Of a DNA stretch of 64,000 nt, positions 1,535 through 51,985 are shown in pieces. The DNA lies in assembly GCF_036365525.1 (NCBI RefSeq), contig NC_090413.1:28906262-28970261 (forward strand). The letters run 5' to 3'. Both the position numbers and the translations under genes were made by a program. Under the pieces are notes generated by a model. That model saw only the letters and a list, made by a program, of their open reading frames with translations. It was not told where the DNA came from and did not search any database. Numbering within the stretch: the stretch's first letter is position 1; each line of letters starts with the position of its first letter. The stretch is from Heterodontus francisci (taxonomy: Eukaryota).

Positions 1535-1684
1535 CTGTCAGGGAAAAAACTCACAGTAAACATGGGATATGGAATCCATTCAATATAGGACCTGTTAAGA
1601 GTAACTCCCTGAAATAATAGCACATTTCTAATTAACCCAATAGGCAGGTTGCTTTTTGAAAGCAAGACACATATTCTGTGCAAT

Positions 1685-3045: not shown

Positions 3046-4584
3046 TTTAGTTGCCCTCACTGCACCCCTTGCTGTTACTGCATCAATATGATATATCAGC
3101 CTATTTTTTGATCTCAAATATTGGCTTCTCTTGTTCACCTTAATCAAAGTGCTCTGAAAGGGGTAGATCTTACCGACAACCTGCACTGAACTGTTGTTTG
3201 AGGAGGTGACATCCCAGATTAGTGGAAGAAACTAGTTGACATAGAATCAGAGAATAAGGAAATTGTTTCTATAGGCACTCACTGAGCATCCAACAAGCAC
3301 TGTTCCTCAGATGTGATGCTCACAGGAGGGGACAGCTGCTTTATTCTATCTTAGACCAATTGAAATAACCCTTAGTAACTCCAGACTGAGGCCTGCCCTC
3401 TAAGTGGACCATGCACCTAAATGTTGGGCAGGAAATCCCGGAGCATCTGTCAGCCTCAGCCTTGAAAAGCCACAGCCAGAAGGCTTTGAATGCTTTAAAT
3501 CATCCTGCGGTTAGGGAGGAAGTGGTGAAAAATTGAAACACAAAACTGCCTGGATTAACTTTCACCTGCCCTTGGACCTCCACAGAACTCCGGTGCACCT
3601 GGCTTAATCATTGCATCAGCTTTGATCAAGCACCCCAAAGCTTGAGAACTCAACAGTTGTAAAAATAAGAGAAAGAATTTAGAGGCTGGGCATGTCCACT
3701 TTCACATTATTGAAAAGGTTATACTGGGTCCAAGCCTGCTACAGCCACAGATCCAGTTGAATCCAGTGCGGAAATCACAGGGCAATGGGAGCAAAATTCA
3801 CGTCCATTGTTCTGGAGAATGTCAGTTTCCTGATGTGGGAAGAGGGAAGAAGGAAGTGGGGATCACCCCCCACCCACCAGCCTTTCTGGACATTGGCCCT
3901 CGAGGGGGTTGCACTTTAAAAGCACTAGATCAGGTGAAGAAAATGCAGGTATAGCCACCCAAAGAAGCACAGTAGTAGGAAAAAGTAGGACGACTTGTGT
4001 GCATTATATACATTGTTGTAGCAGAACAGAAATGTGCGCTTCTGTTGCGGTTTGCTATTTCTAGAGGTTAGTGTCATGCAGGAAAGGTGATTTTAGTGAA
4101 ATGGAAAGCGGGCATTTTTAATAAAAGGTGGCCAATCTACAAATGGCAGTCTTCCAGACAGCAAATTGAAAATCTGTCCCAATGTAGGATACTGTCTAGA
4201 ACTTCTCTTCCATTCCCCAGCACACAAAACAATAAACATGGTAGAAAATAGTAACCGTCAAACTGACAAAGTACATTGATCACAAGGCAAACTAATATTA
4301 TAAATTCACCATCTGTAGGACTGATTTAAGGTACATTTACGAATGAAGCGAATCCCTGACTGTCTGCCTGTTTTTGTTTCATTTCTATCTTTCTCATCGT
4401 TATTTAGATTGAAATTTCTATTTCCTGTTCTCAAACAAACTATTCAGTATGACGGGAAAGCAGTAACGGTTGATCACAGAATAAAACTAACAGCTATCAT
4501 TTTAACTGGATGAAAACCATATAATACTACTTGAATCTATGTAAATAAATAAATATTGCGTATATTTAAAAGCATTTTACCTAC

Positions 4585-4654
4585 CTGTTAGAATAAAAAG
4601 TAATGTGAAAAGCCAATTACATTCAATCGGCGAAGTTATTCTAAAATCCATCAT
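4585..4654 (-). CDS. Gene A (paralog) exon 1, signal peptide
   Basis: Identical to 51757-51826, including the CAG|GTAGGT donor. Confidence 0.85.
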
Positions 4655-11320: not shown

Positions 11321-11324
11321 AGTT

Positions 11325-16580: not shown

Positions 16581-17140
16581 GGATCCCCATTGCAATCAAG
16601 TAGTGGGAAGCCGCCCCATTGAGGGACGAGGCTCCCGCCTCCAGAGCTGCCAGCCAATTGGAAGGAGCTGTGGTTGCTGCTGGTACTGCAGGAGCCCTGC
16701 AGCATCAAGGACATTTTAGACCCCGGGACAGGTAAGTGAGGTCGAGGTCCCGATACCATTCAGGCAGGGACTGGTGACAGGGTGGGGGTTGGTGGGTGGG
16801 GGGAGGCTCACCCGGGAAGGGATGGGGAGGCAGCCATCGCTGCCAGGGGTGTCCACTGGGAGCTCTGGATTTGCCCCAAAGGAGGGACCCCCTCCCCCCA
16901 CAACCCACAAGGAGGCTGCCAGACTTTACCTGGAGATGACATTTTAATGATCTCTTTGGACCTTCTCTGTTACTAATATTTTTCCACAGTAGTTGACAAA
17001 TAATCTTTTAAAATTGATGAAACTTGTTTCATATTATTGTCCCTCGCAGGTTATAGTTTTGATTCCAGATTTTGTTTTCCACTTGGGTCTATTGGATTAT
17101 TGTTGGTCTTTGTATTTTGTAGTTTTTATTTTCCTGTTTT

Positions 17141-17238
17141 CTAGTCATTCCTCTTCAAGTAATAAATGATGGCTCCTGTTGCAAGGACAAATATGGCCAC
17201 CACTGATACACTTACTGCAGCTATGATAGCTGTCATAT
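17141..17238 (-). CDS. Second transmembrane exon TMb with a 4-residue tail (ancestral frame extends to 17051)
   Basis: Acceptor TTTTCCTCACAG. Translates DMTAIIAAVSVSVVAIFVLATGAIIYYLKRND then TAG. Read-through gives KTGK*KLQNTKTNNNPIDPSGKQNLESKL*. Confidence 0.72.
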
Positions 17239-19745
17239 CTGTGAGGAAAAATGGAAGTTGAATAAAAGATTTGTAAAACTGTATTTGAATAATCTTTTTT
17301 CAAAATACCACAATTTGCTCAGCGTTTTTAATCTTCTCATGTCAGATACATATTTTGTTCCATGTGTGTCCAAGCAGAACTACATCTTTGCAATTTGAAA
17401 TTCTACTGCAATCACGAGAGAGCAATGACCATTCAGTTCAGTTTAGATTAGGAATTGATTGCAGTAGTTGTGCTGATATCCCTTCACTGGCATCATTGAC
17501 TTCTTCTGCCTTTGAGTTCTTGTACCTCCTGTCAATCTTGTTCAGATCCCTCCTGTTCTCTGTTACAATCCCACCTTCAACTAAAATCTGAAGGCTTCAA
17601 ACTTGAGCACACCTGGAATATATAGTGTGTGATCTTGTTATTCACCACAAAATCTAACTTGACTCTGAGCCCTGACCCAGATTCACTCTGCAGCTTCTGC
17701 CCTTCCCTTTGTCACTCTCACTACTTCCATAAGACCACCTCCACCTGCCTCAATATCCTCTCTACCCAACTTCTGATCTTTCAACTACCTTTACTGTCCC
17801 TGTGATTTCTGATGTCATAAAGGACTCCATTTGTTCCCATGCAAAACCTCCATTAGCCCTTCCACCAAAAGCATGCACTTGCTCCACTCGTCTTTTCTAA
17901 CTACTGCTCCATCTTCAGTTTCCTTTCCTCCCTAGGTTCCTTACACTTACCATTTCCACCAGCTCCATGTCTGCATCTTCCACAACTACCTACTTGAATA
18001 TTCAATCCTATTTCCACCCTGCCCATAGCACTGACATAGTCACAGAGTGCTAAGACTAAGACAGTGACAAAGGTGTGTTATCCCTCTTTGCCCTCCTCAA
18101 CCACTCTGTGTTACTCAACATAGTTTACCTCCTCTACCAGTTCTGCTGTGCAATCCAGCTTTGTATTACTGATCTTGCTTGGTTCCATCCGACCTGTTCT
18201 GATGCGAGGTTCTTTTTTATCTCATCCTTACACACCCATCTCTTAAGTCCACCAAGAATCCATCCGTGGTTCTCTCTTCTTCCTCAGATACATAGTTCCC
18301 CTCAATAACATCCATAACCACAGGTTTTATTAAATCATTTATTCAACTTCCATTTTTCCCCACAGCTCTCATAGAATGATGCTATAGGAATGGAACTAAA
18401 GAGGGATAAAATAGTTCTCCAAGATGGAATTCTAGAACGGTTAACTACAGAAGGCACCTATTCGGCCCATCGAGCACATGCCAGCTCTCTGCAAGAGCAT
18501 TTTAGGTAGTCCCACTTGCTGGCCCTTTCCCTGTAGCCCTACAAACTTTTTGCCTTCACAGCTCTCCGATTCCCTTTTGAAAGCCATGATTGAATCTGCC
18601 TCCAGCACCATTTCAGATCATAACCATTCACTGCAAAAAAAAGTTATCCTTATGTTGCCTTTGGTTCTTTTGTTAATCACTTTAAATCTGTGTCCTCTGG
18701 TTCTAGACCCATCCATCAATGGGAACAGTTACCCTCTATATCCACTGTTCAGACCCCTCATGTTTATGAACACCTCGATCAAATTTCCTTTCAACCTTAT
18801 CTTCTCTAAGGAAAACAGTAAGGCTGGTGTAATGAGAATGGCAGGCGGTGATAAACAATAAATGCCAGCAGCACTACCCATGGCTGGTGTCAGAAAAATA
18901 TAGTTGGCCTAATGAGCATGCAAGGTAGTTGTCTGCTCATGTTTCAGTGTTGTATCAGTTTGTAATAAATTATGATCAGGTTCTTCATGTCTACAAGTTC
19001 CTTCATTTTCACTCCAACTTCCCTAAATCTTTTTTGTCTGTCTACAAAAACCATCTCTTTGATCAGGCTTTTGGTCACTTTCCCCTAACTTTTGCACTCA
19101 GGCTTGCATCTGTTCATTTCTTCCTGTAAGCAGGAGAATGTTTTGCTACATTAAAACTGCTGTATCAATTAATTTGTTGTGAGAGGATAGATCTTGCATC
19201 CTCCCACTAGACATCAGTGTTCCAACATTCAGAACCATCGTGTTGCTACACTTCTGTCATTCTCAATACAGCCACTCGGATACACATAATATTGGTGCAG
19301 ATTCATTCTCTGTTCATTGTTCTTTCTTCTATTGAGCTGGTCTTAAAGATTATGGTAATTGTAGAGATAACGTGAGTCTTAGCACCCTTTGATTAACTGC
19401 ATCATTAACTACCATTTGTAGTTAGCTAACATCAAAAATATACTGTAAGTTTCTAGTTGATAATTGTGAAATTTAATAGTGAATAGACCGATACTTGGAA
19501 TATTACTTAAACTGCAGGAGACTAAGGATGACCAAGTGAGTCCCTGCAATACATTGGCATATTAGCATTGAGCACTACAAACTTGGCATGGCAATCCAGG
19601 TGAACATGTGGAGTGGAGCAGGGACAAAAAAGTTAGCAGAATAAAAACTAGTGCTTATGTTATTCTCTTTGAAGTAGAGATTTATGCTGCAGTTTATACT
19701 AAAGATAGATGTTTTAATCAATTATCACTGGGATTTCAGACTGGC

Positions 19746-20024
19746 CTTTGATTGTGATGTCCACGTTCTTCTCATCAGCTCCAAGTTTATTAGCAGCTGT
19801 ACATTTATATATTCCATTATTTTTTGATGTGGCTTTTGAAATATGGAGGTCTCCTGGAGGCTTAATCACAACATTGCTTTTTTTGGGATATTCCCATTTC
19901 AGTGTTGGCTGTGGGTTTCCTTGGGAGTCACAGATTAATATAATGCTGTCACCATTACTGAAATGTACTGGGGACTCTGAGATAATTTTCTTATTTGCTG
20001 ATATAGTTGTACCTATAGGTTTAT
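19746..20024 (-). CDS. Orphan Ig exon D6b, paralog of gene B exon 7 (alternative exon or pseudo-exon)
   Basis: Acceptor TTCTTTTCTTTTGCAG, 279 nt, phase 1-1, no stops. Translates KPIGTTISANKKIISESPVHFSNGDSIILICDSQGNPQPTLKWEYPKKSNVVIKPPGDLHISKATSKNNGIYKCTAANKLGADEKNVDITIK. Donor AAG|GCCAGT. Not in the ORF track. Confidence 0.8.
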
Positions 20025-20624
20025 CTGCAAAAGAAAAGAAAATGTTTGAAAATTAAGTGAGAAGTGACTTCCATTTCATTTTGTTAAAGTGCAATTATAT
20101 CTTCTTTTAACTTAAATGCTTTGTGCTATGAATTTGGCTTCAGCAGAAACGATTCTGTGCCCAGACCTTTGCCATTGTGCAAAAACAGCCAGAGCAGACT
20201 CCCTATCAAATCTTGTTTCTTTCCAATGAAAAATTGTTGCATAGTAACGGACCACCTAAAATTAGGGCTTGCACTTAGGGGCATCCTGTGAAACTGTTTC
20301 ACTGCACAATGATACAATCAATGCCAAACACCAATTGTTATTACGCTTCGATATATTTCCCCCACAAAAGGGCCTGAATTAATATTGCACAGAACATCTA
20401 TAATAATCATCTCAAAGCTCTTCCATGCAATAAGTACACTGACTATGATATAATCAAATGTGGCTGCCTTGGGATTATTTATGGTGCATTCAAAGTGACT
20501 CTATTGCAAGAGGGGTTTTTGAGATGGAGAGTGCAAGATTGGAGTATAATTGGAACAGAGTATAAAACATGTGTTCAGGAACTTTGTTAAAGATATTTCA
20601 AACACACAATATTATGATAATATA

Positions 20625-23057
20625 AAAGCAAAGTACTGCGGATGCTGGAAATCCGAAAAAAAGCAGAAAGTGTTGGCAAAGTGAAGGCATTTGAGAAAGT
20701 CCCACATAAGGGACTGTTAACTAAGGTAGAAGCCCACGGAGTTGAGGGCAAATTATTGACATGGTTCGGGAGTTGGTTGAATGGTAGGCGACAGAGAGTG
20801 GGGATAATGGGTAAGTACTCCGATTGTCAGGATGTGACTAGTGGTGTCCCACTAGTGGGGCCTCAATTATTCACATTATTCATTAACGACTTGGATGATG
20901 GCATAGTAAGTCATATATCCAAATTTGCATCATGATACAAAGTTAGGCGGCATTGTAGACAGTCTAGATGATAGCATGAATTGCAAAGAGATATTGACAG
21001 ACTAGGTGAGTGGGCAAAACTGTGGCAGATGGATTTCAATGCGGGCAAGTGTGAGATTATCCATTTAGGACCAGAAAGAATAGAGCAGGGTACTTTCTAA
21101 ATGGGAAGAGCTTAAGTACAGTGGATGTCCAAAGAGACTTGGTGGTTCAGGTGCATAGATCTTTAAAATGCCACGAGCAAGTGCAGAAAATAATCAAAAA
21201 GGCTAATGGAATGCTAGCCTTTATATCTAGAGGATTGGAGTATAAAGACACAGAGGTTATGCTGCAGCTGTACAAAACCCTGGTTAGACCCCACTTGGAG
21301 TACTGTGAGCAGTTCTGGGCACCACACCTTTGGAAGGATATATCGGCCTTGGAGGGAGTGCAACGTAGGTTTACAAGAATGATACCTGGACTACAGGGGT
21401 TAAGTTACGAGGACAGATTACACAAATTAGGCCTGTTTTCGCTAGAATTTAGAAGGTTAAGGGGTAATCTGATCGAAGTCTTCAAGCTATTAACAGGAAA
21501 AGACAGGCTAGATAAAGATAAACTATTTCCACTGGTTGGAAATTCTAACACTAGGGGGCATAATCTAATAATTAGGACCAGATCGTTCAGGAGAGATGTT
21601 AGGAAGCACTTCTTCATGCAAAGGGTGGTCGAGGTTTGGAACTCTCTCCCACAAACAGCAGTTGAAGCTAGAACAGTTTTTAATTTTAAATCTGAGATAG
21701 ATAGATTTTTGTTAAGCAAAGATATTAAGGGATATGGGCCAAAGGCAGGTCTATGGAGCTAGGCTGCGGATCAGCCATGATCTCATTGAATGGCGGGACA
21801 GGCTCGGGGGGCTGAATGGCCTCCTCCTGTTCCTATCTTCCTATGTTCCTATGTCCTATGAAATACTCAGCAGGTCTGGCAGCCTCAGTGGAAAGAGAAG
21901 CAGAGTTAACGTTTCAGGTCTGTGACCTTTCATCAGAACTGGCAAAGGTTAGAAATGAAATAGGTTTTAAGCAAGTAAAGCGAAAGTGGGGGGAGAGAGT
22001 ACAAAAGGGAAAGTGTGTGATAGGACTGAGAGCTGGAGAGATTAACTGACAAGGAGGTCATGCTTGCTATTTCAACACACCCCCCTACTCTCATGTCCAT
22101 ATGTCTGTCCTTGGCCTGCTGCAGTGTTCCAGTGAATATCAACACAAGCACGAAGTACAGCATCTCATTTTCCAATTAGGCACTCTACAGCCTTCGGGAC
22201 TGAACATTGGTTTCATTAATTTCAGAGCAAGACTGGCTCCTTTTTTATGATTATTTTATTTTATTTTGTTTTATCATTTTTTACCATGTGCCTGCCTTAA
22301 TCTGGGTTTTTCATGTTTGTGCTTTTGACTAGGGCTGTTCATTATTCTGTCATTAACACTCTCTCTGCACTAATGCTTTGTCTTTCACCACACCATTAGC
22401 ACACTCACTTTGCCTTTGCCCCATGACCTCCTTGTCAGTTCATCTCTCCGGCCCTCTGTCCTATCACACATCCTCCCCTTTGTTCTCTTTTCCCCACCTG
22501 CACTTCACTTGCTTAAAACCTGTTACATTTCTAATCTTTGCCAGTTCTGATGAAAGGTCACAGACCTGAAAGGTTATCTCTGCTTCTCTCTCCACAGATG
22601 CTGTCAAACAGTATTTATGTGGCTGGGCCAGTTCAGTTTCTAGTCAACGATAACCCCAGGATTTGGATAGTAGGGGATTCAGCAATAGTAATGCCATTGA
22701 ACATCAAGGGGAGATGGTTAGATTCTCTCTTGTTGGAGATGGTCATTGCCTGGCACTTGTGTGCTGCGAATGTTACTTGCCATTTATCGGCTCAAGCCTG
22801 GATGTCGTCCAGGTCTTGCTGCATCTGGACACGGGCTGCTTCAGTATCTGAGGAGTCGCGAATGGTGCTGAACATTGTGCAATTATCAGAGAACATCCCC
22901 ACTCTGCCTTATTATCGAAGGAAGGTCAGTATTTCCAGCACTTTCTGTTTTTATTTCAGATTTCCAGCATCTGCAGAGTTGAAATACCACTAACAAAGTT
23001 CCTGAACACATCTTTTATACAGTGTTCCTGCTGAGTATTTCCAGCACTTACTGTTTT
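20625..23057. mobile_element. Nest of Penelope termini (both orientations) and CR1 pieces
   Basis: Penelope ends at 20625-20680, 21860-22605 and 22928-22976. CR1 at 20683-21857 (+, ORF 21121-21762) and a CR1-like piece at 22606-22910 (-). Confidence 0.8.
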
Positions 23058-23309
23058 TAACACAGTAGTGAATGTTATTATTTTAAATGTTATGTTGTTT
23101 TTCCCAGTGTTTGCAATATTCTGCTTACTGTTAGTCCAGTACAGAATGTCTGAAGAGTCAGATGGGTTGAAAGAAACGGAAGCTTTATGAAACAGTCTTA
23201 CTGCTGTGGTTTACATCTTCCAAGCCTGTATGTGAGGCATCCACACACGTTGTGTTACATCACTTCCTGTGATGAGGTATACAGCATGATTAGCATTTTT
23301 AAAAATTCG

Positions 23310-24000
23310 TTCATGAGATGTGGGCATCGCTGGCTCGGCCAGCATTTATTGCCCATTCCTAACTGCCCTTGAGAAGGTAGTGGTGAGCTGCCTTCTTGAA
23401 CCGCTGCAGTCCTTGGGGTGCAAGTACAGCAACAGTGCTGTTAGGAAGGGAGTTCCAGGATTTCGACCCAGGTACAGTGAAGGAACACAATATAGTACCA
23501 AGTCAGGATGGTAGCTTGGAGGGGAATTTGCAGGTGGTGGTGTTCCCATGCATCTGCTGCCCTTGACCTTATAGGTGGTAGAGGTCAGGGGTTTGGAAGA
23601 TGTTGTCAAAGGAGCCATGGTGAGTTGCTGCAGTGCATCTTGTAGATGGTACACACTGCTGCCACTGTGCATCGGTGCTGCAGGGAGTGAATGTTGAAGG
23701 TGGTGGATGGGGTGCCAATCAAGACGGTGGCTTTGTCCTGAATGGTGTTGAGCTTCTTGAGTGTTGTTGGAGCTGCACGCATCCAGGCAAGTGGAGAGTA
23801 TTCCATCACACTCCTGACTTGTGCCTTGTAGATGGTGGACAGATTTTGGGGAGTCAGGTGGTGAGTTACTCGCCGCAGAATTCCCAGCCTCTGAACTGCT
23901 CTTGTAGCCGCAGTATTTATATGGCTGGGCCAGTTCTGTTTCTGGTTCAATGGTAATCCCCAGGATTTGATGGTTGGGGTTTCAGTGATGGTAAGGATAT
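23310..24000 (-). mobile_element. CR1-like LINE 3' end
   Basis: LSTIYKAQVRSVMEYSPLAW motif and the family 3' tail. Confidence 0.85.
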
Positions 24001-25290
24001 TGGGGACAAAATCCCTCCATTCTTTCAAACTGTTGCGATGCGGAAGGGGGTTTATATTTTTTACCTGGATAGAAGAGATAAAATGTGCCAGTGTTCTTTA
24101 TCCATATTTATCATTTAATCTTGTAAACTGAACAACAGCCTTATTGTATTTTCTATCTGCGTGCTGACAAAGCACAAACTTACATAGGAATCATAACACA
24201 AAACAGGCTGTTTGACCCATTCAGCTAATGTTAGCATTTATCTTCTGCACGAGCAGCAGTCCCTAGTAACCTGTGCCCACCCTGTTCCCATAACACTTTA
24301 TCACCTTCGCTGTCTTTGCTTCAATCATGAATTCTGGTACTGCATCCCATAACCTCACAGTCTCCTGTGTAAAAAATGTTTCTTCTGATCTATATCTTAA
24401 ATCTCTTACATTTAATCTTGCACTAGATCCTTAAAAGCACTGAGAACAGTCTGTTTCAATCGCTTTATAGTTTTAAACATCTCTATCAAATCATCCCGCA
24501 AGCTCCTCTCTTCTTACAAAACTGCCTGAGAAGGTTATTGCCAAGGTGACTAATGCCAGAGCTCTCCATAAACAGACGCCAATGGAAATAAGAATTTATT
24601 TTGACTTTAACTAAAATTCCTTGAAAAACTCTAGACTGCCATTTACTAGTGTGAGATCAAATATGTCTGGAACATTAAACCTATTCCGTTTCATTTCAAC
24701 TCCATTACATTTTACATACTTTGTAAATTTCAATTTATACAAATTTATTTTAAAAAGCATTTTTAAACCAGTTGTATGACAATGTTTTTGCTGATGATGC
24801 TACAGGCTGATTAGAAATCACTGGTGCCTACTGTGTTACTAGCAGATATGAAAGACTATCCACCTTGTTTTTCACATCTTGCTGTAGCACAACAGTACAG
24901 GGCCATGTTCACCCCAAAACTGCTCATTACCAAGCTCAGCAATAAAGTGACCTGGGATCAAAATAGAATCCTTACTGCATATACCGGCTTCTGGAATGTC
25001 ACAGATAAATTGACAGACTGAAAAACACTCTAGTGGAACAAGGTACGAATGTAAATCAAACTGATTATTGCACAAAGGATATAGAAATGCACAGAATTTA
25101 GGTTTTACACTGAGGGACTTTTTTTTCCTCCGTTCTTCATGCCGTGGAACCAAGTAAAACACAGCTCTGTCACTCTAGGTAAAAATTTGTTTTCAAATTG
25201 GCTGCTGCAAAGTTAACCAAACAACCATCAATGGATAGTGGCATCCAGAGAAAACATATTAGTAGCAATATCAACATTACTTTTGAAAGT

Positions 25291-26966
25291 TTCTTTCTTT
25301 TCTTTTCTTTTGGGCCTCCTTATCTCGAGAGACAATGGATACGCGCCTGGAGGTGGTCAGTGGTTTGTGAAGCAGCGCCTGGAGTGGCTATAAAGGCCAA
25401 TTCTGGAGTGACAGGCTCTTCCACAGGTGCTGCAGAGAAATTTGTTTGTTGGGGCTGTTGCACAGTTGGCTCTCCCCTTGCGCCTCTGTCTTTTTTCCTG
25501 CCAACTACTAAGTCTCTTCGACTCGCCACAATTTAGCCCTGTCTTTATGGCTGCCCGCCAGCTCTGGCGAATGCTGGCAACTGACTCCCACGACTTGTGA
25601 TCAATGTCACACGATTTCATGTCGCGTTTGCAGACGTCTTTATAACGGAGACATGGACGGCCGGTGGGTCTGATACCAGTGGCGAGCTCGCTGTACAATG
25701 TGTCTTTGGGGATCCTGCCATCTTCCATGCGGCTCACATGGCCAAGCCATCTCAAGCGCCTCTGACTCAGTAGTGTGTATAAGCTGGGGGTGTTGGCCGC
25801 TTCAAGGACTTCTGTGTTGGAGATATAGTCCTGCCACCTGATGCCAAGTATTCTCCGAAGGCAGCGAAGATGGAATGAATTGAGACGTCGCTCTTGGCTG
25901 GCATACGTTGTCCAGGCCTCGCTGCCGTAGAGCAAGGTACTGAGGACACAGGCCTGATACACTCGGACTTTTGTGTTCCGTGTCAGTGCGCCATTTTCCC
26001 ACACTCTCTTGGCCAGTCTGGACATAGCAGTGGAAGCCTTACCCATGCGCTTGTTGATTTCTGCATCTAGAGACAGGTTACTGGTGATAGTTGAGCCTAG
26101 GTAGGTGAACTCTTGAACCACTTCCAGAGCGTGGTCGCCAATATTGATGGATGGAGCATTTCTGACATCCTGCCCCATGATGTTCGTTTTCTTGAGGCTG
26201 ATGGTTAGGCCAAATTCATTGCAGGCAGACGCAAACCTGTTGATGAGACTCTGCAGGCATTCTTCAGTGTGAGATGTTAAAGCAGCATCGTCAGCAAAGA
26301 GGAGTTCTCTGATGAGGACTTTCCGTACTTTGGACTTCGCTCTTAGACGGGCAAGGTTGAACAACCTGCCCCCTGATCTTGTGTGGAGGAAAATTCCTTC
26401 TTCAGAGGATTTGAACGCATGTGAAAGCAGCAGGGAGAAGAAAATCCCAAAAAGTGTGGGTGCGAGAACACAGCCCTGTTTCACACCACTCAGGATAGGA
26501 AAGGGCTCTGATGAGGAGCCACCATGTTGAATTGTGCCTTTCATATTGTCATGGAATGAGGTGATGATACTTAGTAGCTTTGGTGGACATCCGATCTTTT
26601 CTAGTAGTCTGAAGAGACCACGTCTGCTGACGAGGTCAAAGGCTTTGGTGAGATCAATGAAAGCAATGTAGAGGGGCATCTGTTGTTCACGGCATTTCTC
26701 TTGTATCTGACGAAGGGAGAACAGCATGTCAATAGTCGATCTCTCTGCACGAAAGCCACACTGTGCCTCAGGGTAGACGCGCTCGGCCAGCTTCTGGAGC
26801 CTGTTCAGAGCGACTCGAGCAAAGACTTTCCCGACTATGCTGAGCAGGGAGATTCCACGGTAGTTGTTGCAGTCACCGCGGTCACCTTTGTTTTTATAGA
26901 GGGTGATGATGTTGGCATCGCGCATGTCCTGGGGTACTGCTCCCTCGTCCCAGCACAGGCATAGCA
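25291..26966 (-). mobile_element. RTE-clade LINE, 5'-truncated, with an uninterrupted RT ORF
   Basis: NYRGISLLS, QCGFR, FIDLTKAFD, GVKQGCVLAP, LFADD, RRLRWLGHV and a C-terminal CxxC..HxxxC. (AAAAG)n tail at 25291-25311. Confidence 0.95.
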
Positions 26967-27429
26967 AAAGCATAGCATAAGTAAAGCTTTGAAAAGTTAC
27001 TTCATCCAAAATTTCCAATTGATTGTTATTGTTTAAAATACAGTATTTTAGCACAATTGAAAACCTTCAAGAAACAACAGGGGTCCAGTTAGCTCAGTTA
27101 GTTACATGATGGTGCAGAATGATGTCAATACTGCTGTAGTAGTTCACAGAGGCTTGCCTCCTTGCCTTGCCCCCTGCTTGCAGTTTGGTGACCCTGAAGC
27201 TACATATCACCAACTTGTCTCTTTCTCTAATGGAGAGAGATGTCTATGGTCCTTTTGGGACTACAGCTAGCACAAAAACAAACAAAAATAATTTGTTCAC
27301 AGATACAAAATGTTACACCAAGGGGTTGTAAACAGACCTTTTTGTCATTATTTATAATCCTGATTTATCTATACAAACCTGGAACTGTTGTCACATTAAG
27401 GGGCACTTGCCTACTTACTAAATTGGTAT

Positions 27430-29110
27430 CCAGGCCGGTGAGTCTAACATCAGTGGTAGGGAAACTATTGGAATAAATTCTGAGGGACAGGAATAATCTC
27501 CAATTGAAGAGGTAGGGATTAATCAAGGATAGTCAGCATGGCTTTGTCAGGGGCACATCGTGTTGAATTTTTTGAGGTGGTGACGAGATGTGTAGATGAG
27601 GCTAAAGCAGTTGATGTAGTCGACATGGACTTCAGTAAGGCTTTTGATAAGGTCCTGCATGGGAGATTGGTTAAGAAGGTAAGAACTCATGGGATCCAGG
27701 GCAATTTGGCAAATTGGATCCAAAATTGGCCTAGTGGCAGGAGGCAGAGGGTGATGGTCCTGTGACCAGTGGTGTACCGCAGGGATCGGTGCTGGGACCC
27801 TTGCTGTTTGTAGTGAACGTTAATGATTTAGACATGACTATAAGAGGTATGATCAATAGGTTCGCAGATGACACAAAAATTGGTGGTGTTGTAAATAGTG
27901 AGGAGGAAAGCTTCAGATTACAGGACGATATAGATGGGCTGGTAAGATGGGCGGAGCAGTGGCAAATGGAATTTAATTCTAAGAAGTGTGAGGTAATGTA
28001 TTTTGGGAGGACTAACAAGACAAGGTAATATAAAAAGGGTGGTAGGACCCTAGGAAGTACAGGTCAGAGGGACGTTGGTGTACTTGATCACTGAAGGCCG
28101 CAGCACAGGTAGATAAGGTGGCGAGGAAGACATATGGGATACTTGCTTTTATTAGCCAAGGCACGGAATATAAGAGCAGGGAGGTTGTGATGGAGCTGTA
28201 TAAAACTTTAGTTAGGCCACAGCTGGAGTACTGTGTACAGTTCTGGGCACCACACTATAGGAAGGATGTGATTGCACTGGAGAGGGTGCAGAGGAGATTC
28301 ACCAGGATGTTGCCTGGGCTGGAGCATTTCAGTTTTGAAGAGAGACTGGATAGGCTAGGGTTGTTTTCCTTTGACTAGCGAAGACTGAGGGGGGACCTGA
28401 TTGAGGTATACAAAATTATGAAGGGCATAGGGGAGATGGGAAGAAACTTTTTCCCTTAGTGGAGGTGTCAATAACCAGGAGGCATAGATTGAAGGCAAGG
28501 AGCAGGAGGTTTACAGGGGATTTGAGGAGAAGAATTTTCATGACGGCACAGTGGCGCAGTGGTTAGCACCGCAGCCTCACGGCTCCAGTGACCCGGGTTC
28601 AATTCTGGGTACTGCCTGTGTGGAGTTTGCAAGTTCTCCCTGTGTCTGCGTGGGTTTTCTCCGGGTGCTCCGGTTTCCTCCCACAAGCCAAAAGACTTGC
28701 AGGTTGGTAGGTAAATTGGCCATTATATAAATTGCCCCTAGTATAGGTAGGTGGTAGGGAAATATAGGGACAGGTGGGGATGTTTGGTAGGAATATGGGA
28801 TTAGTGTAGGATTAGAATAATTGGGCGGTTGATGGTCGGCACAGACTCGGTGGGCCGAAGGGCCTGTTTCAGTGCTGTATCTCTAAAACTAAAAAAAAAC
28901 CCAGAGGGTGATTGGAATCTGGAACAAACTGCCTGAAGGGGTGGTAGAGGCAGGAACCCTCACAACATTTGAGAAGTATTTAGATGAGCACTTGTAATGC
29001 CACAGCATACAAGGCTATGGACCAAATGCTGGAAAATGGGATTTGAATAGATAGGTGTTTGATAGCCAGCATGGACACAATGGGATGAAGGGCCTGTTTC
29101 TGTATAATTC
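27430..29110 (+). mobile_element. CR1 LINE 3' portion with a SINE insertion
   Basis: SGVPQGSVLGP, RFADDTKIGG and LVRPQLEYCVQFW. Confidence 0.9.
28543..28899 (+). mobile_element. Full-length tRNA-derived SINE (HE1/V-SINE type)
   Basis: Same structure as 11325-11662, with a complete head and A-rich tail. Confidence 0.9.
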
Positions 29111-29854
29111 TATACTATAAATGGTGCACATATCCTAATATCTACTATTAACAATGGAAATAAAAAAAATAAGCTCATAGAGTATGACTTTAAAATGGGG
29201 ACTGAATTACATCTGTGTACCCCATGTCCTATAATCCCACTTCTGAAAACTACAGGAGATCAACTAACACATTATAACAGAGTAGATATACCTTTAAGGT
29301 ACCTTATGCATCAGTCACAAACATCATAGAATAGTTACAGCACAGAAGGAGGCCATTTGGCACATCGTGTCTGTGCTGGCTCTCTGCAAGAGGAACTCAC
29401 CTATTCCCACCAACGACCCCCCACCTTTTCTCTGTAGCCCTGCAATTGTTTTCTCTTCAGATAATTATCCAATTCTCTTTTGAAAGTCTCGATTGAATCT
29501 GCCTCCATCACACACTCGGGCAGTGCATTCCACTCACTGCGTAAAAGGTTTTTCCTTCATGTCACCTCAGGTTCTTTTACCAATTACTATGCCCATAACA
29601 GGATTCAAACCTGCAACCATCTGATTACATCATGATCCACAGAAACGTCAGACCATTAGGATACATGACCACATATTATTAGAGCTAAAAGTAAATTTCA
29701 TTGCTGTGGGCTAATTCTGCAATCCCAGTGCAGAGACTGACTCACAGGGAGCATGTGGCAAAGAACTGTATTATAGCCCTGTTACTGATCCGTGCTCACT
29801 GTGTGATTGGCTTCCTCCTGACAGCATAGAATTAATCCTTTCACTTTCATTTCA

Positions 29855-29860
29855 TTTATT
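29855..29860 (-). terminator. Candidate polyadenylation signal for the TMa terminal exon
   Basis: First AATAAA on the minus strand, about 285 nt downstream of the TMa stop. Confidence 0.4.
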
Positions 29861-30144
29861 AAAAGGAAGTTCCTGTAACATTTTCACAGAAAGGGTAGTG
29901 GAAATCTGGAACTCTCTGTCCCAAAAGACTGTGGAATCTGGGGGTCAATTAACATTTTTCAGGACAGAGATAGATGACTGAGATGGAGAAAAGGCAGGTA
30001 AATGGAGTTGAGGTACAGATCAGTTATTATCTAACTGAATGCAGAACAGGCTCCCTCAGTAAGGACAATACAAAAAGTAGTGGTTTAACCATTTCTCCTT
30101 GAACAAGCACCAATTATTTTGGCTAAACATGTTTGTAATTGTTG

Positions 30145-30350
30145 TTATCCATTGGAATAGTCACTAAAATTATTTAAAGGGATATTTTCCTGATGTTCAG
30201 TTCCATTGGAGACAGGTAGATTGTTCTGTACTTCATAATTTCTGCTTCTAAGGGCAGTCCATTTCTTGTACAAGCCAAAGGTTATTGTCATTGCTACGAT
30301 TATTCCAATTGTTACAAATAAGATCACCCAAAGGCTGTTCCATGTTACAT
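30145..30350 (-). CDS. Gene B exon 8, transmembrane and cytoplasmic tail (TMa)
   Basis: Acceptor TTTTCACAG. Translates DVTWNSLWVILFVTIGIIVAMTITFGLY, then KKW..RSRNYEVQ...YSNG and a TAA stop. Confidence 0.88.
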
Positions 30351-33300
30351 CTGTGAAAACATTAATAAAAGTACAAATCATTTATTTCAATATATTTATT
30401 ATGAAACTCCTGATCATTTCCAAAATTCATAGTTTATTTGCAAGGAAATTTTTCATGGAATCTCTAGTTTGCAATATTCAACTATTTGCTGTATTTCAAG
30501 TTGTATTCTTCACCTCCTTTTATTCTCACCACACATGGACCATTCCTGATTACCTACACCTACACTCCATGTCCCTCTAATACCTTTAATTAATTTCTTC
30601 CTTTTTTCTATTCTCCTCCACTGTCTCTGATTTGTGATGCTGCTTGTCTGACATCCAGTATTAGATGAGCAGAAATTTCCTGCAACTAAGTATTGAGAAG
30701 ATCAAAGCCTTTGTCTTCAGTCCTCACCACAAATACTGCTCCCTACCCACCAACTCCGTCCCTCTTACAGACCACAGTCTGAGACTGAATCAAACTGTTT
30801 TCAACCTTGGCAAACTATATGACTCTGGACCAAGCTTCCGATCCCATATTCTTTCCAACACCAAGACCACCTATTTCCACCTCCGAAACATCGCCTGTTT
30901 CTGCTCCTGCCTCAGCTCATCTGCTGCTACAACCCATGCCTTTGCCTCTCTAGACTCAAATATTTCGATGCTCTCCTGGTCAGCCTCCCAAACTGCACCC
31001 TCCTTCAACCTGAGTTCATACATACTGCTGTCCGCTTCTTAACTCGCATCAATTCCCATTCACAAATCATCCCCCTGTGCTCGTTGACCTACAATGGCTC
31101 CTGGTCCAGCAACACCTTGATTTTTTTTTAATTGTTAGCCATGTTTTCAGTTCCCTTCCTATTTCTGTAACTTTCTCCATCCCGACAACCCTACAGATCT
31201 TTGTGCTCTTCCAATTCTTGTCTCTTTTGGATCCCCGATTTTAATCATTCCATCACTGGCAGCATGCCTTCAGCTGCTTAAGCCTTACCTCTCTCAACAA
31301 CAATAACAGCAACTTAAATTTATATAGCACCTTTAGTGTAATAAAACATCCTAAGGTGCTTCACAGGAGCATTATTTAAAGAAAAAATTGATACATCTCA
31401 GGGTCAAATATAAAACCAAGTTTACAAACAGTCTAGTTCAGCCTCAGACAGTTGCCAGAGAGAGGAATGGCAGTCATATGATGTTTGGGCACATGGCCAA
31501 ATGCTTGGTCAAAAAGGTAGGTTTTAAAAGGAGGATAGGTTGCAGGATCGAATTCCAGACCTTTATTTTATTCGTTTGTGGGATCTGGCATAGCTGGCTA
31601 AGCCAGCATTTGTTTCCCATCCATAATTGCCCTGAACTGAGTGGCTTGCTCGGCCATTTCAGTGTCAACCACATTGCTGTGGATCTGGAGTCACATGTTG
31701 ACCAGACCACCAGGTAAGGTGATAGATTTCCTTCCCTAAAGGACATTAATGACCAGATGGGTTTTCATGACAATATCACTGAGACTAGCTTTCAATTATT
31801 AACTATATTTATTGATTAATTGAATTTAAATTCCATCAGCTGCCATGGTGGGTTGAACCCATGTCACCAGAACATTAGCCTGGACTTCCAGTTTGCTAAC
31901 TTAGTGACATTACCACTAGGCCACTATCTCTCCCCAGTCTGGTTTAGCCTCAGGCAGTTCCCAGAGAAAGATATGGCAGTGGCGAGGGAACAAGTTTGCA
32001 GCGGGGACTGAAGACAATGACTTTGGTCTTCCCAATATTCTCTTCTACTTTATGATATTCCTTAAAACCTACTTCATTGACCAAGCTTTTGGTCACCTCT
32101 CCTAATATCTTCTTATGAGGCTCAGTATTAAATTATTTTTCATAATCACTCCTGTGAAGCACCTTGGGATGCTGATTACATGAAAGAAGCTATACAAATG
32201 CACATTCTTGTTGTTGATATAAGGGTCATCCATCAAACAACTTCCTGTTTTTTTTTGAACAGGTTCCAGGATTTCACTGATACTTCCTCTGTTTGTTTGT
32301 CCCTACATTTTGCTTCCAATTCTATGAAAACTCTTGTTAATCTTCCATTTTTCTGCCCAAAACATTCACCATCCATTCTCTGCACAGATTTGACTGACCT
32401 GCTATGTTACAGCCACTCCTGGTTTTGTTTTACACTGTGATTGCCCCCCCTCACTATTAGAATTGAAGCCCAGCCATGTGATGCAGCTCACTGAGCTGCC
32501 AACACCCTGCACCATGACCGGCAGTGTGTGGATTCACAGCTGCAACTCCCCTGCTGCGGAGTTATTGCTCAGGCAGTCTGGGCAAACACAGAGCAGGAAT
32601 AAGGCGCTCCTACACACAAAGAGAAACAAGTGGAAGGGAGTATCACTCTGGGCCATTCTTACTAATGTCCTAGAGGCCAGTTACAGAGCAGCATTGTGAG
32701 AGGCAGGCAGTAGTTTATCCATTTGTCCCATTACCAGCACGTGTGGAGTAGAACAGGAGTCTAAATAACTGAACTAAGTAAACCAAAATGGCACTCGGGA
32801 TTTATTTGGGATAACAGAAATGCTGCTTCAATCCACAAAGGATTAATTATTTATTCTTTGCATTCTGACCAATATTACAAACTGACCTTTGATCCTGATG
32901 TCCACTTCCTTCTCATGAGTTCCATATTTATTGGTAGCTGTACATTTATAAATGCCTTGATGTTCTGATGTTGCGTGGGAAATATGGAGGACTCCAAGAG
33001 GACCATCCTGAATGTTCCTGCCATTACTGGGGGCTTCCCACTTTAATGTCGGCTTGGGGTTTCCATTGGAATTGCAGATAATTGTAACCTCATCACCTTC
33101 ACTGAGGGTTACTGGAACCCCTGACATGGTTTGGTTATTTACTGATATGGTTGTATTTCGAGGTTTATCTGGAAAAGAGAAAAGGAAAAGATGAAAAGAG
33201 GCAGGAAAGGCACATCACAGGATCACTGACACAGCACCACATCAGTGCTTGGATTAGCTGCATTCCCAAACTTAGTCACATATTGTGCTCTCGTCCATCT

Positions 33301-36300
33301 TCAACAGCCAGTTCAGAACATCTGAATCCCTACAGTTGGATTGAAGTCCAGTGAGTGTTACTGCCTGGAATTTACTCCCACTCATCTGTCATTTTATAAA
33401 GCCAAAGTGAAATGCAGTTTCTTTGTGTAAATATAAACTCAACATAACAGCCACTCACTGGATCAGCTTGCCTCAGGTTATCACACAAACACACTGTTCA
33501 CAGCGCTCAGAACAAAGGAACATTCAAAGAGTAAACTTCCTGCAATCTATTACTCACACAAAATGACTGAATTTACAGAGGAGTTTCTGGATCCATACTC
33601 ATTGGTAACTGTGCACGTGTACAGACCACTATGCCACATTTGAACTGATGGGATGTGGAGTATCTCTCTGCTGAGTATCTTCCCATCTTTGGTCCAGAAC
33701 ACCTGGGGAGCTGGGTTCCCTGCACCATGACATGTTAAATTCTGTGATTTCCCTTCAATCCAGTCTTCTTGTGCTTTAAAGATCTGTGCTTCCATTGGAG
33801 CATATGTAAATTTCATTAGAATACAAAATTAAAACTTGAAATTGAATAACAAAGCTCAAATACTTTTCAGATCTTTCTGGTGATTTTATTTTGGTGCTCT
33901 CCAGATGTCAGTGCTCAGAATAAAACTGACTTCTCTGTGAAAACTCAGTGTCAGCATCAAACACTCCCAGGTCAAATAAAAAGCAGGATAAAGACAGAGA
34001 AATTCTCCCTGTACTCTGCGGACAAAAGCAAAAATTCTGAGTGTCACTTCTGAGAAATCTCCAAGTGATTTCTGCTTTACTCTTTCCTGTTTCTGAATAG
34101 CTGATTCCATTTCAAATTACCTTCAAAACTCATATGTCAGCCTCTGGTAATGGGAAATCCCATAGGAAGACTGTCAACAGTTACCTACTGTACCAGTCAT
34201 GCCTGTATTTGTCACTTTGATTGATATTTATAACGCTGAATGACCTGTCATGCAACGTTAGTGCGAGCCCAGTCGTGAAACTATTTTTGTGTTTGAAGTC
34301 AGCTGTGTGTAAGCCTGTGGCTCCATTACAGATTCATTGGGTGGCAATGTAGAATAAATATATTAAAAAGCCTTCAGATAGCAGCCTTTTTAAACCTCCC
34401 TGCACTGAGGCCTTTCCCCCAAAGTTGTCATTGGATTCCCCCCCTGAACGAAATGGTGCCCCCCTCAGATATTGCATCAGGTTCCATATCCTCAATATTC
34501 CTGCACAGAAAATGGGAACTAAGAATCCACAAGGCATAGGTTCCTTACACTGCATGTTTCCCCCAAACAGAACACTACACTCCAGGTTGAACTCAGGGAT
34601 GCTCATTCCCATGAAGCTCTCGCTGCTCCCTGTCTCCTGGCTGTGGATTCCTCATTGCAACGTGAGTTTAAATTCCCTGTGATTCTCCATTTCTCTGCTG
34701 CATTCTCATTGACAAAGCCCTTAACCCATTTTACCCACCTGCAATTACACCCTCTTGCCTCTGTCTCTTAGATCTATTCAAAAGTCAAATTGCACAAGAA
34801 TGTTAAAGAGACAAACAACAGCAGTAATAACAGGAGGGTGGGCTAGATGAACCTCTAATTTGTTTCCAGTCTGTCACTTTCTCTGCTTCTATGTTTTTCT
34901 ATTTTACCATCACAATATCGTATCAGACAAAATAGGATCATTTCTCCCCAGAGTATTTCTCCGTGAGTGCTGGACAATTACATCAGTTTTTCTGCAGTAT
35001 TTATGAACAAGATGTTAGCTATTCAGTCTTCTGTGTTGTTGGAGGTCAATCATCTGAGCTCCAGGACAACACTGCAGGAGTTCCTCAGGGTAGTGTCCTA
35101 GGCCCAACCATCTTCAGCTGCTTCATCAATGACCTCCTTCAATCATAAAGGTCAGAGGTGGGGATGTTCGCTGATGATTGCACAATCTTCAGCACCATTC
35201 GTGACTCCTCAGATACTGAAGCATCCGTGTAGAAATGCAGCAAGCCCTGGGCAATATCCAGGCTTGGGCTGATAAGTGGCAAGTAACATTCACGCTATAC
35301 AAGTGCCAGGCAATAACCATCTCCAAACAAGAGAGAATCTTACTATCTCCCCTTGACATTCAGTGGCTTTACCATCACTGAATCCCCCACTATCAACATC
35401 CTAAAGTCTACCATTGACCAGAAACTGAACTGGAGTAGCCGGATAAATAGCGTGGCTACAAGAGCAGGTCAGAGGCTCGGAATCCTGAGGTGAGTAACTC
35501 AACTTCTGACTCACCAAAGCCTGTCCACCATCTACAAGGCACAAGTCAGGAGTGTGATGGAATACTGTCCACTTGCCTGGATGGGTGCAGCTCCAACAAC
35601 ACTCAAAAAGATCGACACCAAACAGGACAAAGCAGCCCGCTTGATTGGCACCCCATCTGCAAACATTCACTCCCTCCACCACCGACGCACAGTGGCAGCA
35701 GTGTGTACCATCTACAAGATGCACTGCAGCAACACACCAAGGCTCATTCGACAGCACCTTCCAAACCCGCGACCTCGACCAACTAGAAGGACAAGGGTAA
35801 TAATAAGTAAATAAATGCATGGGAACTCCACCACCTGCAAGTTCCCCTCCAAGTCACACACCATCCTGACTCGGAACTATATCGCTGATCCTTCACTGTC
35901 ACTGGGTCAAAATCCTGGAACTCCCTTCCTGACAGCACTGTGGGTGTACCTACCCCACATGGACTGCAGTGGTTCAAGAAGGCAGCTCACCACCACCTTC
36001 TCCAGGGCAATTAGGGATGGGTAATAAATGCTGGCCTGGCCAGCGACACCCACATCCCATGAATGAATACAAAAAAAGAATGTTGCTCTGTGCATTATTA
36101 TCTCCATTGAAAATGCTATTCTAGCATTCTTCATCTCCCATTTAATAGATCCTATTAATATCCCTCATGTTACAACAGCCCAGTACGGCTCAGCTTCCAA
36201 TTGTTCCTCGCTTGTTCCTGTGGAAGTGTCTGGCCTTCACTTAGCATCTCACCCAATGGTCTGGTCAGGACATGTACCTTGCTATATGGGGTCCCAGGAC

Positions 36301-51826: not shown

Positions 51827-51985
51827 TGAATTTCTGAAGAATATGTGGTCTGTATTTACTATGATCCTAAAGACTTTAGAGTCATTGAATAAATCTAGCT
51901 TAACTCTCCGCGCTGTACCAATTTATTTGTGGACTGACTGAGCACTTGTGTTCAGTGTTGTCGGTGAATGAGTGATCGACCACCC

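What the first reader, a model, noticed from the sequence alone, without database searches (positions are those of the whole stretch)
17051..33168. ICAM-like gene with a duplicated membrane-proximal cassette (D6+TM twice): possible switchable C-termini
Seen: after the normal D6a (32887-33168) and TMa (30145-30350) exons, a second Ig exon D6b (19746-20024) and a second TM exon (17141-17238) follow on the same strand. D6b aligns end to end with D6a (KP..TTIS, C.S.GNP.PTLKWE.P, LHIS.ATS..GIYKCTA.NK.G..EK.VDI.IK). It is only about half identical yet has an open frame, both Cys, the Trp and a strong acceptor. I found no promoter, leader or D1-D5 exons between 20024 and 30145, so the cassette has no 5' end of its own. 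All junctions are phase 1, so D5>D6b>TMb (619 aa), D6a>D6b>TMb (7 Ig, 713 aa) and D6a>TMb (620 aa) are all in frame. Inference: one integrin-binding ectodomain could be shown on two different stalk/TM/tail modules through alternative last-exon choice. I do not know of this arrangement in mammalian ICAM or VCAM genes. The alternative is a relic of a 5'-deleted paralog.
Basis: partly seen in the sequence, partly recalled or inferred. Interest (0 to 1): 0.8.

Follow-up and report, generated by a model that had tools for sequence, protein, structure and literature searches.

The report
Partial three-Ig gene copy behind ICAM-like gene
The extra Ig exon and membrane-anchor exon behind this horn-shark ICAM-like gene are real and spliceable, but they are the back half of a separate, very old three-domain adhesion gene repeated with the neighbouring gene in a tandem array, and I found no evidence that they give the six-domain gene a second C-terminus.

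Summary
On the minus strand, D6b (19746-20024) and TMb (17141-17238) follow D6a and TMa. D6b is an intact phase-1 Ig exon, 57% identical to D6a. No 5' exons lie between TMa and D6b.

D6b is not a local copy of D6a: in a domain tree the two types split before sharks and rays diverged. D6b+TMb is the normal 3' end of a conserved three-Ig gene (leader-D1'-D2-D6b-TMb, 367 aa) in several sharks, with a 334-aa model in a sawfish. The species is Heterodontus francisci or a near relative; its RefSeq models carry this D6b after a D1'-D2' head and join it to the next gene's D1. None joins it after D5 or D6a.

- The D6b donor is GC, not GT.
- The TMb tail is cut by two stop codons, one where relatives keep a conserved tyrosine.
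- The window is a ~47 kb tandem array.

Public contigs show D6b spliced to TMb through the GC-AG intron, but in a copy about 5% different over the TMb exon and 3'UTR. D6b's upstream partner was not seen.

Best reading: a 5'-truncated partial paralogue carried in the repeat. Moderate interest. This scan has already noted the ICAM-like array on neighbouring DNA.

The parts
19746..20024 (-). D6b: intact phase-1 I-set Ig exon. It is the orthologue of the third Ig domain of the shark/ray three-Ig ICAM-like gene. Strong acceptor; GC donor at 19744-19745.
   Evidence: Identical in amino acids to residues 215-306 of horn-shark XP_067877409 (P0153). Falls in the D6b clade with a sawfish and 9 shark genera. 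An exon contig at depth 106 stops exactly at both exon ends in run X1.
17141..17238 (-). TMb: transmembrane exon with only about 4-5 cytoplasmic residues before a TAG stop (17141-17143).
   Evidence: Colinear with the TM and tail of the three-Ig genes (tblastn E 1e-15 to P0154; alignment). The joint 17238<->19746 is present in an X1 contig.
17051..17140 (-). Decayed remainder of the TMb cytoplasmic tail. It carries a second stop, TAA, at 17126-17128, where relatives keep a conserved Tyr. AATAAA overlaps that stop.
17239..19745 (-). D6b-TMb intron (GC-AG). It contains a high-copy repeat (about 18373-18856) and a 1254-nt stretch (18008-19261) that organism B lacks.
   Evidence: joint 'skips 2507, ends CT..GC'. 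Intron contigs have depth about 10-12, against 55-106 for the exons.
20025..30144 (-). Spacer between TMa and D6b. It is rich in transposon sequence, including a 569-aa reverse-transcriptase ORF at 25360-27066, and holds no leader, D1, D1' or D2 relic.
32887..33168 (-). D6a: the membrane-proximal Ig exon of the six-Ig gene.
   Evidence: Groups in the D6a clade with two other horn-shark copies.
30145..30350 (-). TMa: TM and cytoplasmic last exon of the six-Ig gene. AATAAA lies 285 nt after the stop (about 29855-29860).
33558..51826 (-). The rest of the six-Ig ICAM-like gene: leader 51757-51826, D1 48416-48691, D2 41746-42060, D3 39613-39906, D4 36542-36823, D5 33558-33788 (cryptic acceptor).
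   Evidence: The leader and D1-D4 match the horn-shark model P0160. D1 is Pfam ICAM_N and D3 is ICAM1_3_5_D2.
1259..4654 (-). Start of the next array copy downstream: leader about 4585-4654 and D1 1259-1534. D1 is the exon that RefSeq models join to D6b.
   Evidence: The junction ...ITIK|A|SVTGFEVW is in P0153.

Best explanation
D6b and TMb are the last two exons (third Ig domain, and TM plus tail) of an ancient three-Ig ICAM-like gene type: leader-D1'-D2-D6b-TMb, 367 aa in several sharks, with a 334-aa model in a sawfish.

In this horn-shark window they stand without their own promoter, leader, D1' or D2'. They lie between two copies of a six-Ig ICAM-like gene inside a tandem repeat of about 47 kb.

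Inferred origin: a segmental duplication that began inside the D2'-D6b intron of the three-Ig gene carried its 3' half along with the complete six-Ig gene. The pair is therefore a 5'-truncated partial paralogue, not a local duplicate of D6a+TMa.

Current state of the exons:
- D6b is intact and identical in amino acids to the D6b annotated elsewhere in the horn-shark array.
- Its acceptor is strong and its donor is a weak GC.
- TMb keeps its membrane span but has lost its conserved tail to two stop codons.

Shown: the homology, the age of the split, the absence of 5' exons, the stops, the GC donor, and D6b-to-TMb splicing in a near-identical copy.

Inferred: in this unit the exons are used, if at all, only by read-through from the upstream six-Ig gene. 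Their ancestral partner there is the D2 donor (D2|D6b gives ...LQTY|YKP as in relatives), not D5 or D6a. D6b may also be spliced on to the next D1, as in RefSeq models.
For: Species and annotated use:
- P0153 (XP_067877409, Heterodontus francisci) holds the window's D6b and D1 without any amino-acid change. Its order is D1'-D2'-D6b-D1-D2-D3-D4-D6a-TMa.

D6b+TMb as the end of a separate gene:
- Three-Ig proteins of 367 aa end in D6b-type + TMb-type + tail in Heptranchias, Hemiscyllium, Chiloscyllium and Stegostoma. Pristiophorus (654-aa model) and Pristis (334 aa) end the same way.
- In the domain tree the D6b clade (97/81) includes the sawfish and 9 shark genera. The D6a clade (89/94) is separate. 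The window's D6b end branch (0.15) is not long.
- D6a/D6b dS is about 0.5, and DNA similarity is limited to the exon and its splice signals.
- The TMb tail is colinear with relatives' tails; its stops sit at their Q/K/N position and at their conserved Y.

Position in the array:
- No 5' exons lie in the spacer.
- Tandem array: 714-5782 matches 47872-52944 at 97.9%, and 10654-16580 matches 59097-63902 in five collinear blocks of 87-96% that omit 11321-12215.

Transcription:
- An X1 contig joins 19746 to 17238 through a GC..AG intron.
- No horn-shark protein ending in TMb, or with D6b after D6a or D5, appeared in the searches.
Against: - The exon upstream of D6b in transcripts was not seen. The 30 loose letters of the X1 D6b contig were not printed, so D5/D6a-to-D6b joins are not excluded.
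- D6b has no defect, and it is more conserved than its intron between the window and X1: 0 of 279 differences against about 1.3%. That could mean selection rather than gene conversion.
- The duplication breakpoint was not located.
- RefSeq models are computational and can chain exons across tandem copies.
- The runs are only guessed to be RNA.
Confidence: 0.6

Rival explanations
1. First reader's model. The six-Ig gene uses D6b-TMb as an alternative 3' cassette (D5>D6b>TMb, D6a>D6b>TMb or D6a>TMb). The same integrin-binding ectodomain is then shown on a second stalk with an almost tail-less anchor.
For: - All joins are in frame.
- The D6b acceptor is strong, and D6b-to-TMb splicing is real in a near-identical copy.
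- The cassette has no promoter or leader of its own in the window. Any transcript through it must therefore start at an upstream gene.
- D6b is intact.
Against: - No model or contig shows D5 or D6a joined to D6b.
- Homology puts D2, not D6a, in front of D6b in every relative.
- TMa has its own AATAAA 285 nt after the stop, and D6b lies 10 kb further on.
- The TMb contig seen in X1 differs from the window by about 5% and lacks its first stop, so it comes from another copy.
Confidence: 0.13
2. Modular, VCAM-like locus. D6b is a working internal exon that links a D1-D2 head to the D1 of the next unit, giving long multi-module proteins. TMb is an internal alternative terminal exon that gives a short three-Ig membrane form. 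This resembles mouse VCAM-1, which makes a seven-domain TM form and a three-domain GPI-anchored form.
For: - RefSeq models in five genera (Heterodontus, Chiloscyllium, Carcharodon, Mustelus, Cetorhinus) read D1'-D2-D6b and then D1/D1'-D2-...-D6a-TM.
- Separate 367-aa forms ending in TMb exist in Chiloscyllium and other genera.
- In X1 the D6b exon depth (106) exceeds TMb (55) plus retained intron (10). That leaves room for a second 3' partner (inference).
- The mouse VCAM-1 isoforms are described in PMC2193422.
Against: - Gnomon models can chain in-phase exons of tandem paralogues. Several show exact module repeats that could be artefacts.
- The six-Ig unit has its own leader, used in P0160.
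- In this window the head in front of D6b would have to be the six-Ig gene's own D1-D2, with a 21.7 kb skip.
- No junction was seen directly.
Confidence: 0.2
3. This copy is a silent relic. The window's D6b and TMb are never included in mature mRNA. D6b looks intact only because the array copies are young or are homogenised by gene conversion.
For: - The window's TMb version (TAG at 17141-17143) is not seen in X1. The only TMb contig there has TGG and a 3'UTR about 5% different.
- The array shows patchy identity of 87-98%, which fits conversion.
- GC donor, and two stops in the tail.
Against: - Contigs drop minor variants, so absence is not shown (tool caveat).
- The D6b exon contig matches the window at all 279 positions.
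- The splice signals are conserved.
Confidence: 0.25

Closest known systems
Shark/ray three-Ig 'ICAM-2/3/4-like' or 'VCAM-1-like' genes: XP_060711200 (Hemiscyllium), XP_043550979 (Chiloscyllium), GCC18586 (Chiloscyllium punctatum), the Heptranchias and Stegostoma models, and Pristis 'VCAM-1 isoform X2'
   Same: D6b is 62-83% identical to their third Ig domain and falls in the same clade. TMb aligns along the whole of their TM and tail. The D2|D6b and D6b|TM junctions are in the same phase and place.
   Different: The window copy has no leader, D1' or D2' of its own. Its tail is cut by two stops, and it lies downstream of a complete six-Ig gene.
Mouse VCAM-1 isoforms: a seven-Ig TM form and a three-Ig GPI-anchored form made by alternative splicing (PMC2193422, citing Terry et al. 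1993)
   Same: A short three-Ig membrane form and a long multi-Ig form can share the first three Ig exons. After the third Ig exon the choice is between a terminal anchor exon and going on to further Ig exons.
   Different: In the shark the short form has a TM anchor, not GPI. The long form exists only as computational models. Orthology to VCAM-1 was not tested.
Mammalian ICAM family (ICAM-1/2/3/5)
   Same: D1 passes Pfam ICAM_N, and its best solved relative is ICAM-2 (1zxq; shared ...SLEVNCSTTC...). D3 passes ICAM1_3_5_D2. Both are type I membrane proteins with a short tail.
   Different: Six Ig domains with I-set membrane-proximal domains. A tandem array with exon-level mosaicism. NCBI names vary (ICAM-1/2/3/4/5-like, VCAM-1-like, hemicentin-2-like).
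Partial (5'-truncated) gene duplicates in tandem segmental duplications
   Same: The 3' exons of a known gene are repeated without a promoter or 5' exons. There is mixed decay: stops in the tail and a weakened donor.
   Different: One exon (D6b) is fully intact and, at least in a sister copy, still spliced.

Membership tests
ICAM family | N-terminal ICAM-type Ig domain (Pfam ICAM_N, PF03921) | tested here: met
   D1 exon scores 32.2 bits against a cut-off of 21. Its best PDB relative is ICAM-2, 1zxq, E 5e-4.
ICAM family | ICAM D2-type domain (PF21146) | tested here: met
   D3 exon scores 34.3 bits against a cut-off of 27.5. It is third in the chain here, not second.
ICAM family | Binds beta-2 integrins through an acidic residue in D1 | not testable with these tools
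   No binding data are available. An acidic residue lies after the CSTTC motif in D1 and D1', but its equivalence to the integrin-binding residue was not shown.
VCAM-1 | Internal repeat of a three-Ig module, with the integrin-binding domain present twice in one chain | tested here: inconclusive
   Seen only in computational RefSeq models: D1'-D2-D6b followed by D1-D2-.... No transcript junction was seen.
VCAM-1 | Orthology or synteny with tetrapod VCAM1 | not tested
   TMa has AATAAA at +285. TMb has hexamers at +11, +193 and +1176.
   Only D6b-to-TMb was seen. The partner upstream of D6b was not shown. No protein model has D6a or D5 followed by D6b.
5'-truncated partial gene duplicate | The exons are orthologous to the 3' exons of a complete gene found elsewhere | tested here: met
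5'-truncated partial gene duplicate | No promoter or 5' exons of its own | tested here: met
   No leader', D1' or D2' is present anywhere in the 64 kb window, and nothing lies in the 10 kb spacer even at E<=10. Promoter absence was judged only from the absence of a leader exon.
5'-truncated partial gene duplicate | Signs of relaxed constraint | tested here: inconclusive
   The TMb tail has two stops and the donor is GC. D6b itself is intact. D6a/D6b omega is 0.62-0.68 over 92 codons, which is not decisive.

The most novel reading that the evidence does not exclude
The elasmobranch ICAM/VCAM-like cluster works as a modular locus. After the third Ig exon (D6b), splicing chooses between a terminal anchor exon (TMb, short three-Ig form), intron retention (a soluble form ending about 10 residues into the intron, as in the whale-shark model), and continuation into the next unit's D1 (a long form with two integrin-binding heads).

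The D6b-TMb copies repeated in the horn-shark array would then let each six-Ig gene donate its D1-D2 head to such products.

This would put a VCAM-1-like short/long isoform switch before the split of cartilaginous and bony vertebrates.
Probability: 0.2. Interest if true: 0.6.

Novelty: new member of a known kind. Interest (0 to 1): 0.35.

Why it matters
As given, the finding would have been a new way to put one adhesion ectodomain on two anchors. The evidence instead points to an ordinary process: a partial gene copy carried in a tandem duplication.

Three things remain useful:
- Elasmobranchs have an old, conserved pair of gene types, three-Ig and six-Ig, in the ICAM/VCAM-like family. My two paper searches (on ICAM/VCAM in cartilaginous fish and on VCAM-1 isoforms) found no study of this family.
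- Exon-level mosaicism in the array, with in-phase Ig exons, a GC donor and truncated tails, makes automatic gene models unreliable here.
- The question of short versus long forms can be tested with existing shark RNA data.

Tried and rejected
- **Word search with D6b alone.** It found nothing, because of the tool's length window.
- **The look-up of encoding contigs.** I could not fetch the horn-shark head-of-array locus or any orthologous locus, so I could not locate the duplication breakpoint or compute dN/dS on orthologues.
- **Read laying (one call only).** The 30 loose letters upstream of D6b were not among the rows printed, so the upstream partner stays unknown.
- **Local D6a+TMa duplication, rejected.** The tree and the lack of intron similarity argue against it. 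The window's own TMa and TMb gave no tblastn match to each other; their tails, together with relatives' TMa-type tails, share only an old R/K-G-x-Y...KPNNNP-type motif.
- **P0153 as a model of the window's own gene, rejected.** It differs by 2 amino acids in D2, 1 in D3, 4 in D6a and 6 in TMa.
- **Upstream unit also ending in TMb, not shown.** Homology with the upstream unit stops at 16580/63902.
- **Findings look-up by sequence.** Blank.
- **PMC46838.** Not held.
Full report
**1. Observation**

The gene runs on the minus strand. Reading the stated coordinates and translating them confirms four exons:
- D6a, 32887-33168
- TMa, 30145-30350
- D6b, 19746-20024
- TMb, 17141-17238

D6a and D6b are open and are scored as I-set/Ig_3 domains by Pfam. 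They align end to end at 57% amino-acid and 71% nucleotide identity with a single 1-codon gap (tblastn E 1e-30).

The rest of the gene is also there:
- leader 51757-51826
- D1 48416-48691
- D2 41746-42060
- D3 39613-39906
- D4 36542-36823
- D5 33558-33788

D1 passes Pfam ICAM_N. D3 passes ICAM1_3_5_D2. The best solved relative of D1 is ICAM-2.

No relic of a leader, D1, D1' or D2-D5 lies in the 10 kb between TMa and D6b, even at E<=10. That spacer is mostly transposon sequence, including a 569-aa reverse-transcriptase ORF.

- The D6b donor is AAAG|GCCAGT, a GC donor; D6a has GT.
- D6a/D6b similarity stops about 28 nt before the acceptor and 13 nt after the donor. The introns are otherwise unalignable.
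- The window is a tandem array. 714-5782 matches 47872-52944 at 97.9%. 10654-16580 matches 59097-63902 in five collinear blocks of 87-96% that omit 11321-12215. A second, identical D1 exon lies at 1259-1534. D6b-TMb therefore lies between one six-Ig gene and the leader and D1 of the next.

**2. What D6b and TMb are**

A full HMMER search with D6b alone and two word searches with natural proteins gave NCBI and UniRef models from many elasmobranchs (names).

The species is Heterodontus francisci or a very near relative. XP_067877409 (P0153, 'ICAM-1-like isoform X2') contains the window's D6b and D1 without one amino-acid change. It is another array copy, because its D2, D3, D6a and TMa differ from the window by 2, 1, 4 and 6 residues.

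D6b+TMb+tail is the ordinary 3' end of a conserved three-Ig gene, leader-D1'-D2-D6b-TMb:
- 367 aa in Heptranchias, Hemiscyllium, Chiloscyllium and Stegostoma
- also in Pristiophorus (654-aa model) and the sawfish Pristis (334 aa)

A maximum-likelihood tree of 38 D6-type domains gives two clades.
- The D6b clade (support 97/81) holds the sawfish, nine shark genera and the window's D6b. Its end branch is 0.15, which is not long.
- The D6a clade (89/94) holds the window's D6a together with the two other horn-shark copies.
- Chimaera domains fall outside both.

The D6a/D6b split is therefore older than the shark-ray split. D6b is not a local duplicate of D6a. This agrees with dS of about 0.5 and dN/dS of 0.62-0.68 between them. 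That ratio is not decisive for 92 codons.

TMb aligns along its whole length with the TM and tail of the three-Ig genes (tblastn E 1e-15; alignment). Relatives read ...YYL-x-x-N-x-(Q/K/N)-KTG-x-Y-KL-x-N-AKPNNNPQ(I/V)PNE.... The window has TAG at the Q/K/N position and TAA at the conserved Tyr. The sequence after the stops is still recognisable. This confirms the separate note s1-871918.

TMa-type tails carry the same old motif. The window's own TMa and TMb gave no tblastn match to each other.

**3. Use in transcripts**

No run is on record as RNA. The runs that hold the stretch have 116-162 million letters of contigs each, which I take as more like transcriptome than genome assemblies for a shark. 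That is my inference; their kind is only guessed.

In run X1:
- The D6b exon is one contig at depth 106. It begins and ends exactly at 19746 and 20024 and has 30 further letters upstream of 20024.
- A second contig (882 nt, depth 55) joins 19746 to 17238, skipping 2507 nt whose ends are GC..AG on the minus strand. It runs on through at least 330 nt of 3'UTR.
- Intron contigs have depth 10-12.
- Nothing covers the DNA upstream of 20024.

D6b is therefore spliced to TMb through the GC donor, and part of the RNA appears to keep the intron.

Two cautions apply.
- The TMb contig differs from the window at about 5% of positions, nearly all in the 3'UTR, and has TGG where the window has TAG (17142). 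It comes from another copy or allele. The window's own TMb is not shown to be expressed.
- The 30 letters upstream of D6b were not printed, and the tool allowed only one call. The exon that precedes D6b in RNA is unknown.

The D6b contig runs through the junction without a break, which suggests one predominant upstream partner (inference). Depth 106 against 55+10 leaves room for a second downstream partner (inference).

Between X1 and the window the D6b exon has 0 of 279 differences, against about 1.3% in its intron. That fits either constraint or gene conversion.

Runs of organism B carry four changes in D6b, three of them replacing an amino acid. They lack 18008-19261 and show no TMb at 90% likeness or better.

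**4. Gene models**

In horn shark the annotated use of D6b is internal: D1'-D2'-D6b, then the D1 of the following six-Ig gene, skipping TMb and the leader (P0153, P0159, P0161).

The same pattern is modelled in Chiloscyllium, Carcharodon, Mustelus and Cetorhinus. These are computational models. In tandem arrays of in-phase exons they can be chained wrongly, so I treat them as leads.

No model in any species places a D6b-type domain after a D6a-type or D5-type domain. No horn-shark protein ending in TMb turned up.

The six-Ig unit also has its own leader, used in P0160. This confirmed my prediction.

**5. Explanation**

The simplest account of all this is a partial paralogue. The roughly 47 kb duplication unit that amplified the six-Ig gene began inside the D2'-D6b intron of the neighbouring three-Ig gene. 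Each new unit therefore carries D6b-TMb without a leader, D1' or D2'.

The exons remain splice-competent. In this unit they can be reached only by read-through past the TMa poly(A) signal (AATAAA at +285). By ancestry the natural donor is D2, which is nearly the same as D2' and gives the junction ...LQTY|YKP seen in relatives. That would make a 345-aa D1-D2-D6b-TMb product. D5 or D6a are not the ancestral partners.

A more interesting rival is that the cluster really makes short and long forms by choice after D6b. That resembles the mouse VCAM-1 three-domain GPI form and seven-domain TM form (PMC2193422).

**6. Limits**

All searches used single exons or natural database proteins.
I then read the exons from the window file by coordinates.
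- Earlier notes of this scan on neighbouring DNA describe the same array and a 'modular locus' idea. I used them as leads only.

**7. Verdict**

What is here is a 5'-truncated copy of an ancient three-Ig gene's 3' end, embedded in a tandem ICAM-like array. It has an intact Ig exon, a GC donor and a truncated anchor tail. It is a new member of a known kind and of moderate interest.

Noticed in passing
window 33789-33806 (minus strand): Relatives' models start D5 at ...LHVL|YAP.... At that point the window has ...tttacAT|ATGCT, so the canonical acceptor AG reads AT. A cryptic in-phase AG lies 15 nt downstream (exon start 33788). Two horn-shark RefSeq models seen here, P0153 (ICAM-1-like X2) and P0160 (ICAM-5-like X2), skip D5 altogether.
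   Followed up: partly
window 19712-19745 (minus strand): If the GC donor of D6b is not used, the frame runs on for 10-11 residues (GQSEIPVIID) to a stop. The whale-shark 'ICAM-2' model P0179 ends in a similar read-through peptide (SESIISKIIH). Intron contigs in X1 are at about 10-20% of exon depth. A soluble intron-retention form may be conserved.
   Followed up: partly
window 17142: Run X1 has C where the window has T on the plus strand. On the coding strand this is TGG (Trp) instead of the first TAG stop of TMb. No change is listed at the second stop (17126-17128), though the table of differences was cut.
   Followed up: partly
window 18008-19261 and 18373-18856: Organism B contigs skip 1254 nt of the D6b-TMb intron. 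Part of that stretch is a very high-copy repeat (summed contig depth in the thousands). It is probably a transposon insertion specific to this lineage or copy.
   Followed up: no
window 25360-27066 (minus strand): A 569-aa open reverse-transcriptase ORF of a LINE lies in the spacer between TMa and D6b. Several other RT fragments are scattered through the window.
   Followed up: no
window 30145-30190 (minus strand): The TMa tails differ between array copies. The window ends ...TEHQENIPLNNFSDYSNG, P0153 stops at ...TEHQ, and P0160 ends ...EHQDKIPLKEFQ. So the cytoplasmic tails vary among otherwise homogenised copies.
   Followed up: no
window 51757-51826 and 4585-4654 (minus strand): The leader exon of the six-Ig gene was predicted from the sequence (ATG, hydrophobic core, phase-1 GT donor). 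It matches the N-terminus of horn-shark model P0160.
   Followed up: yes
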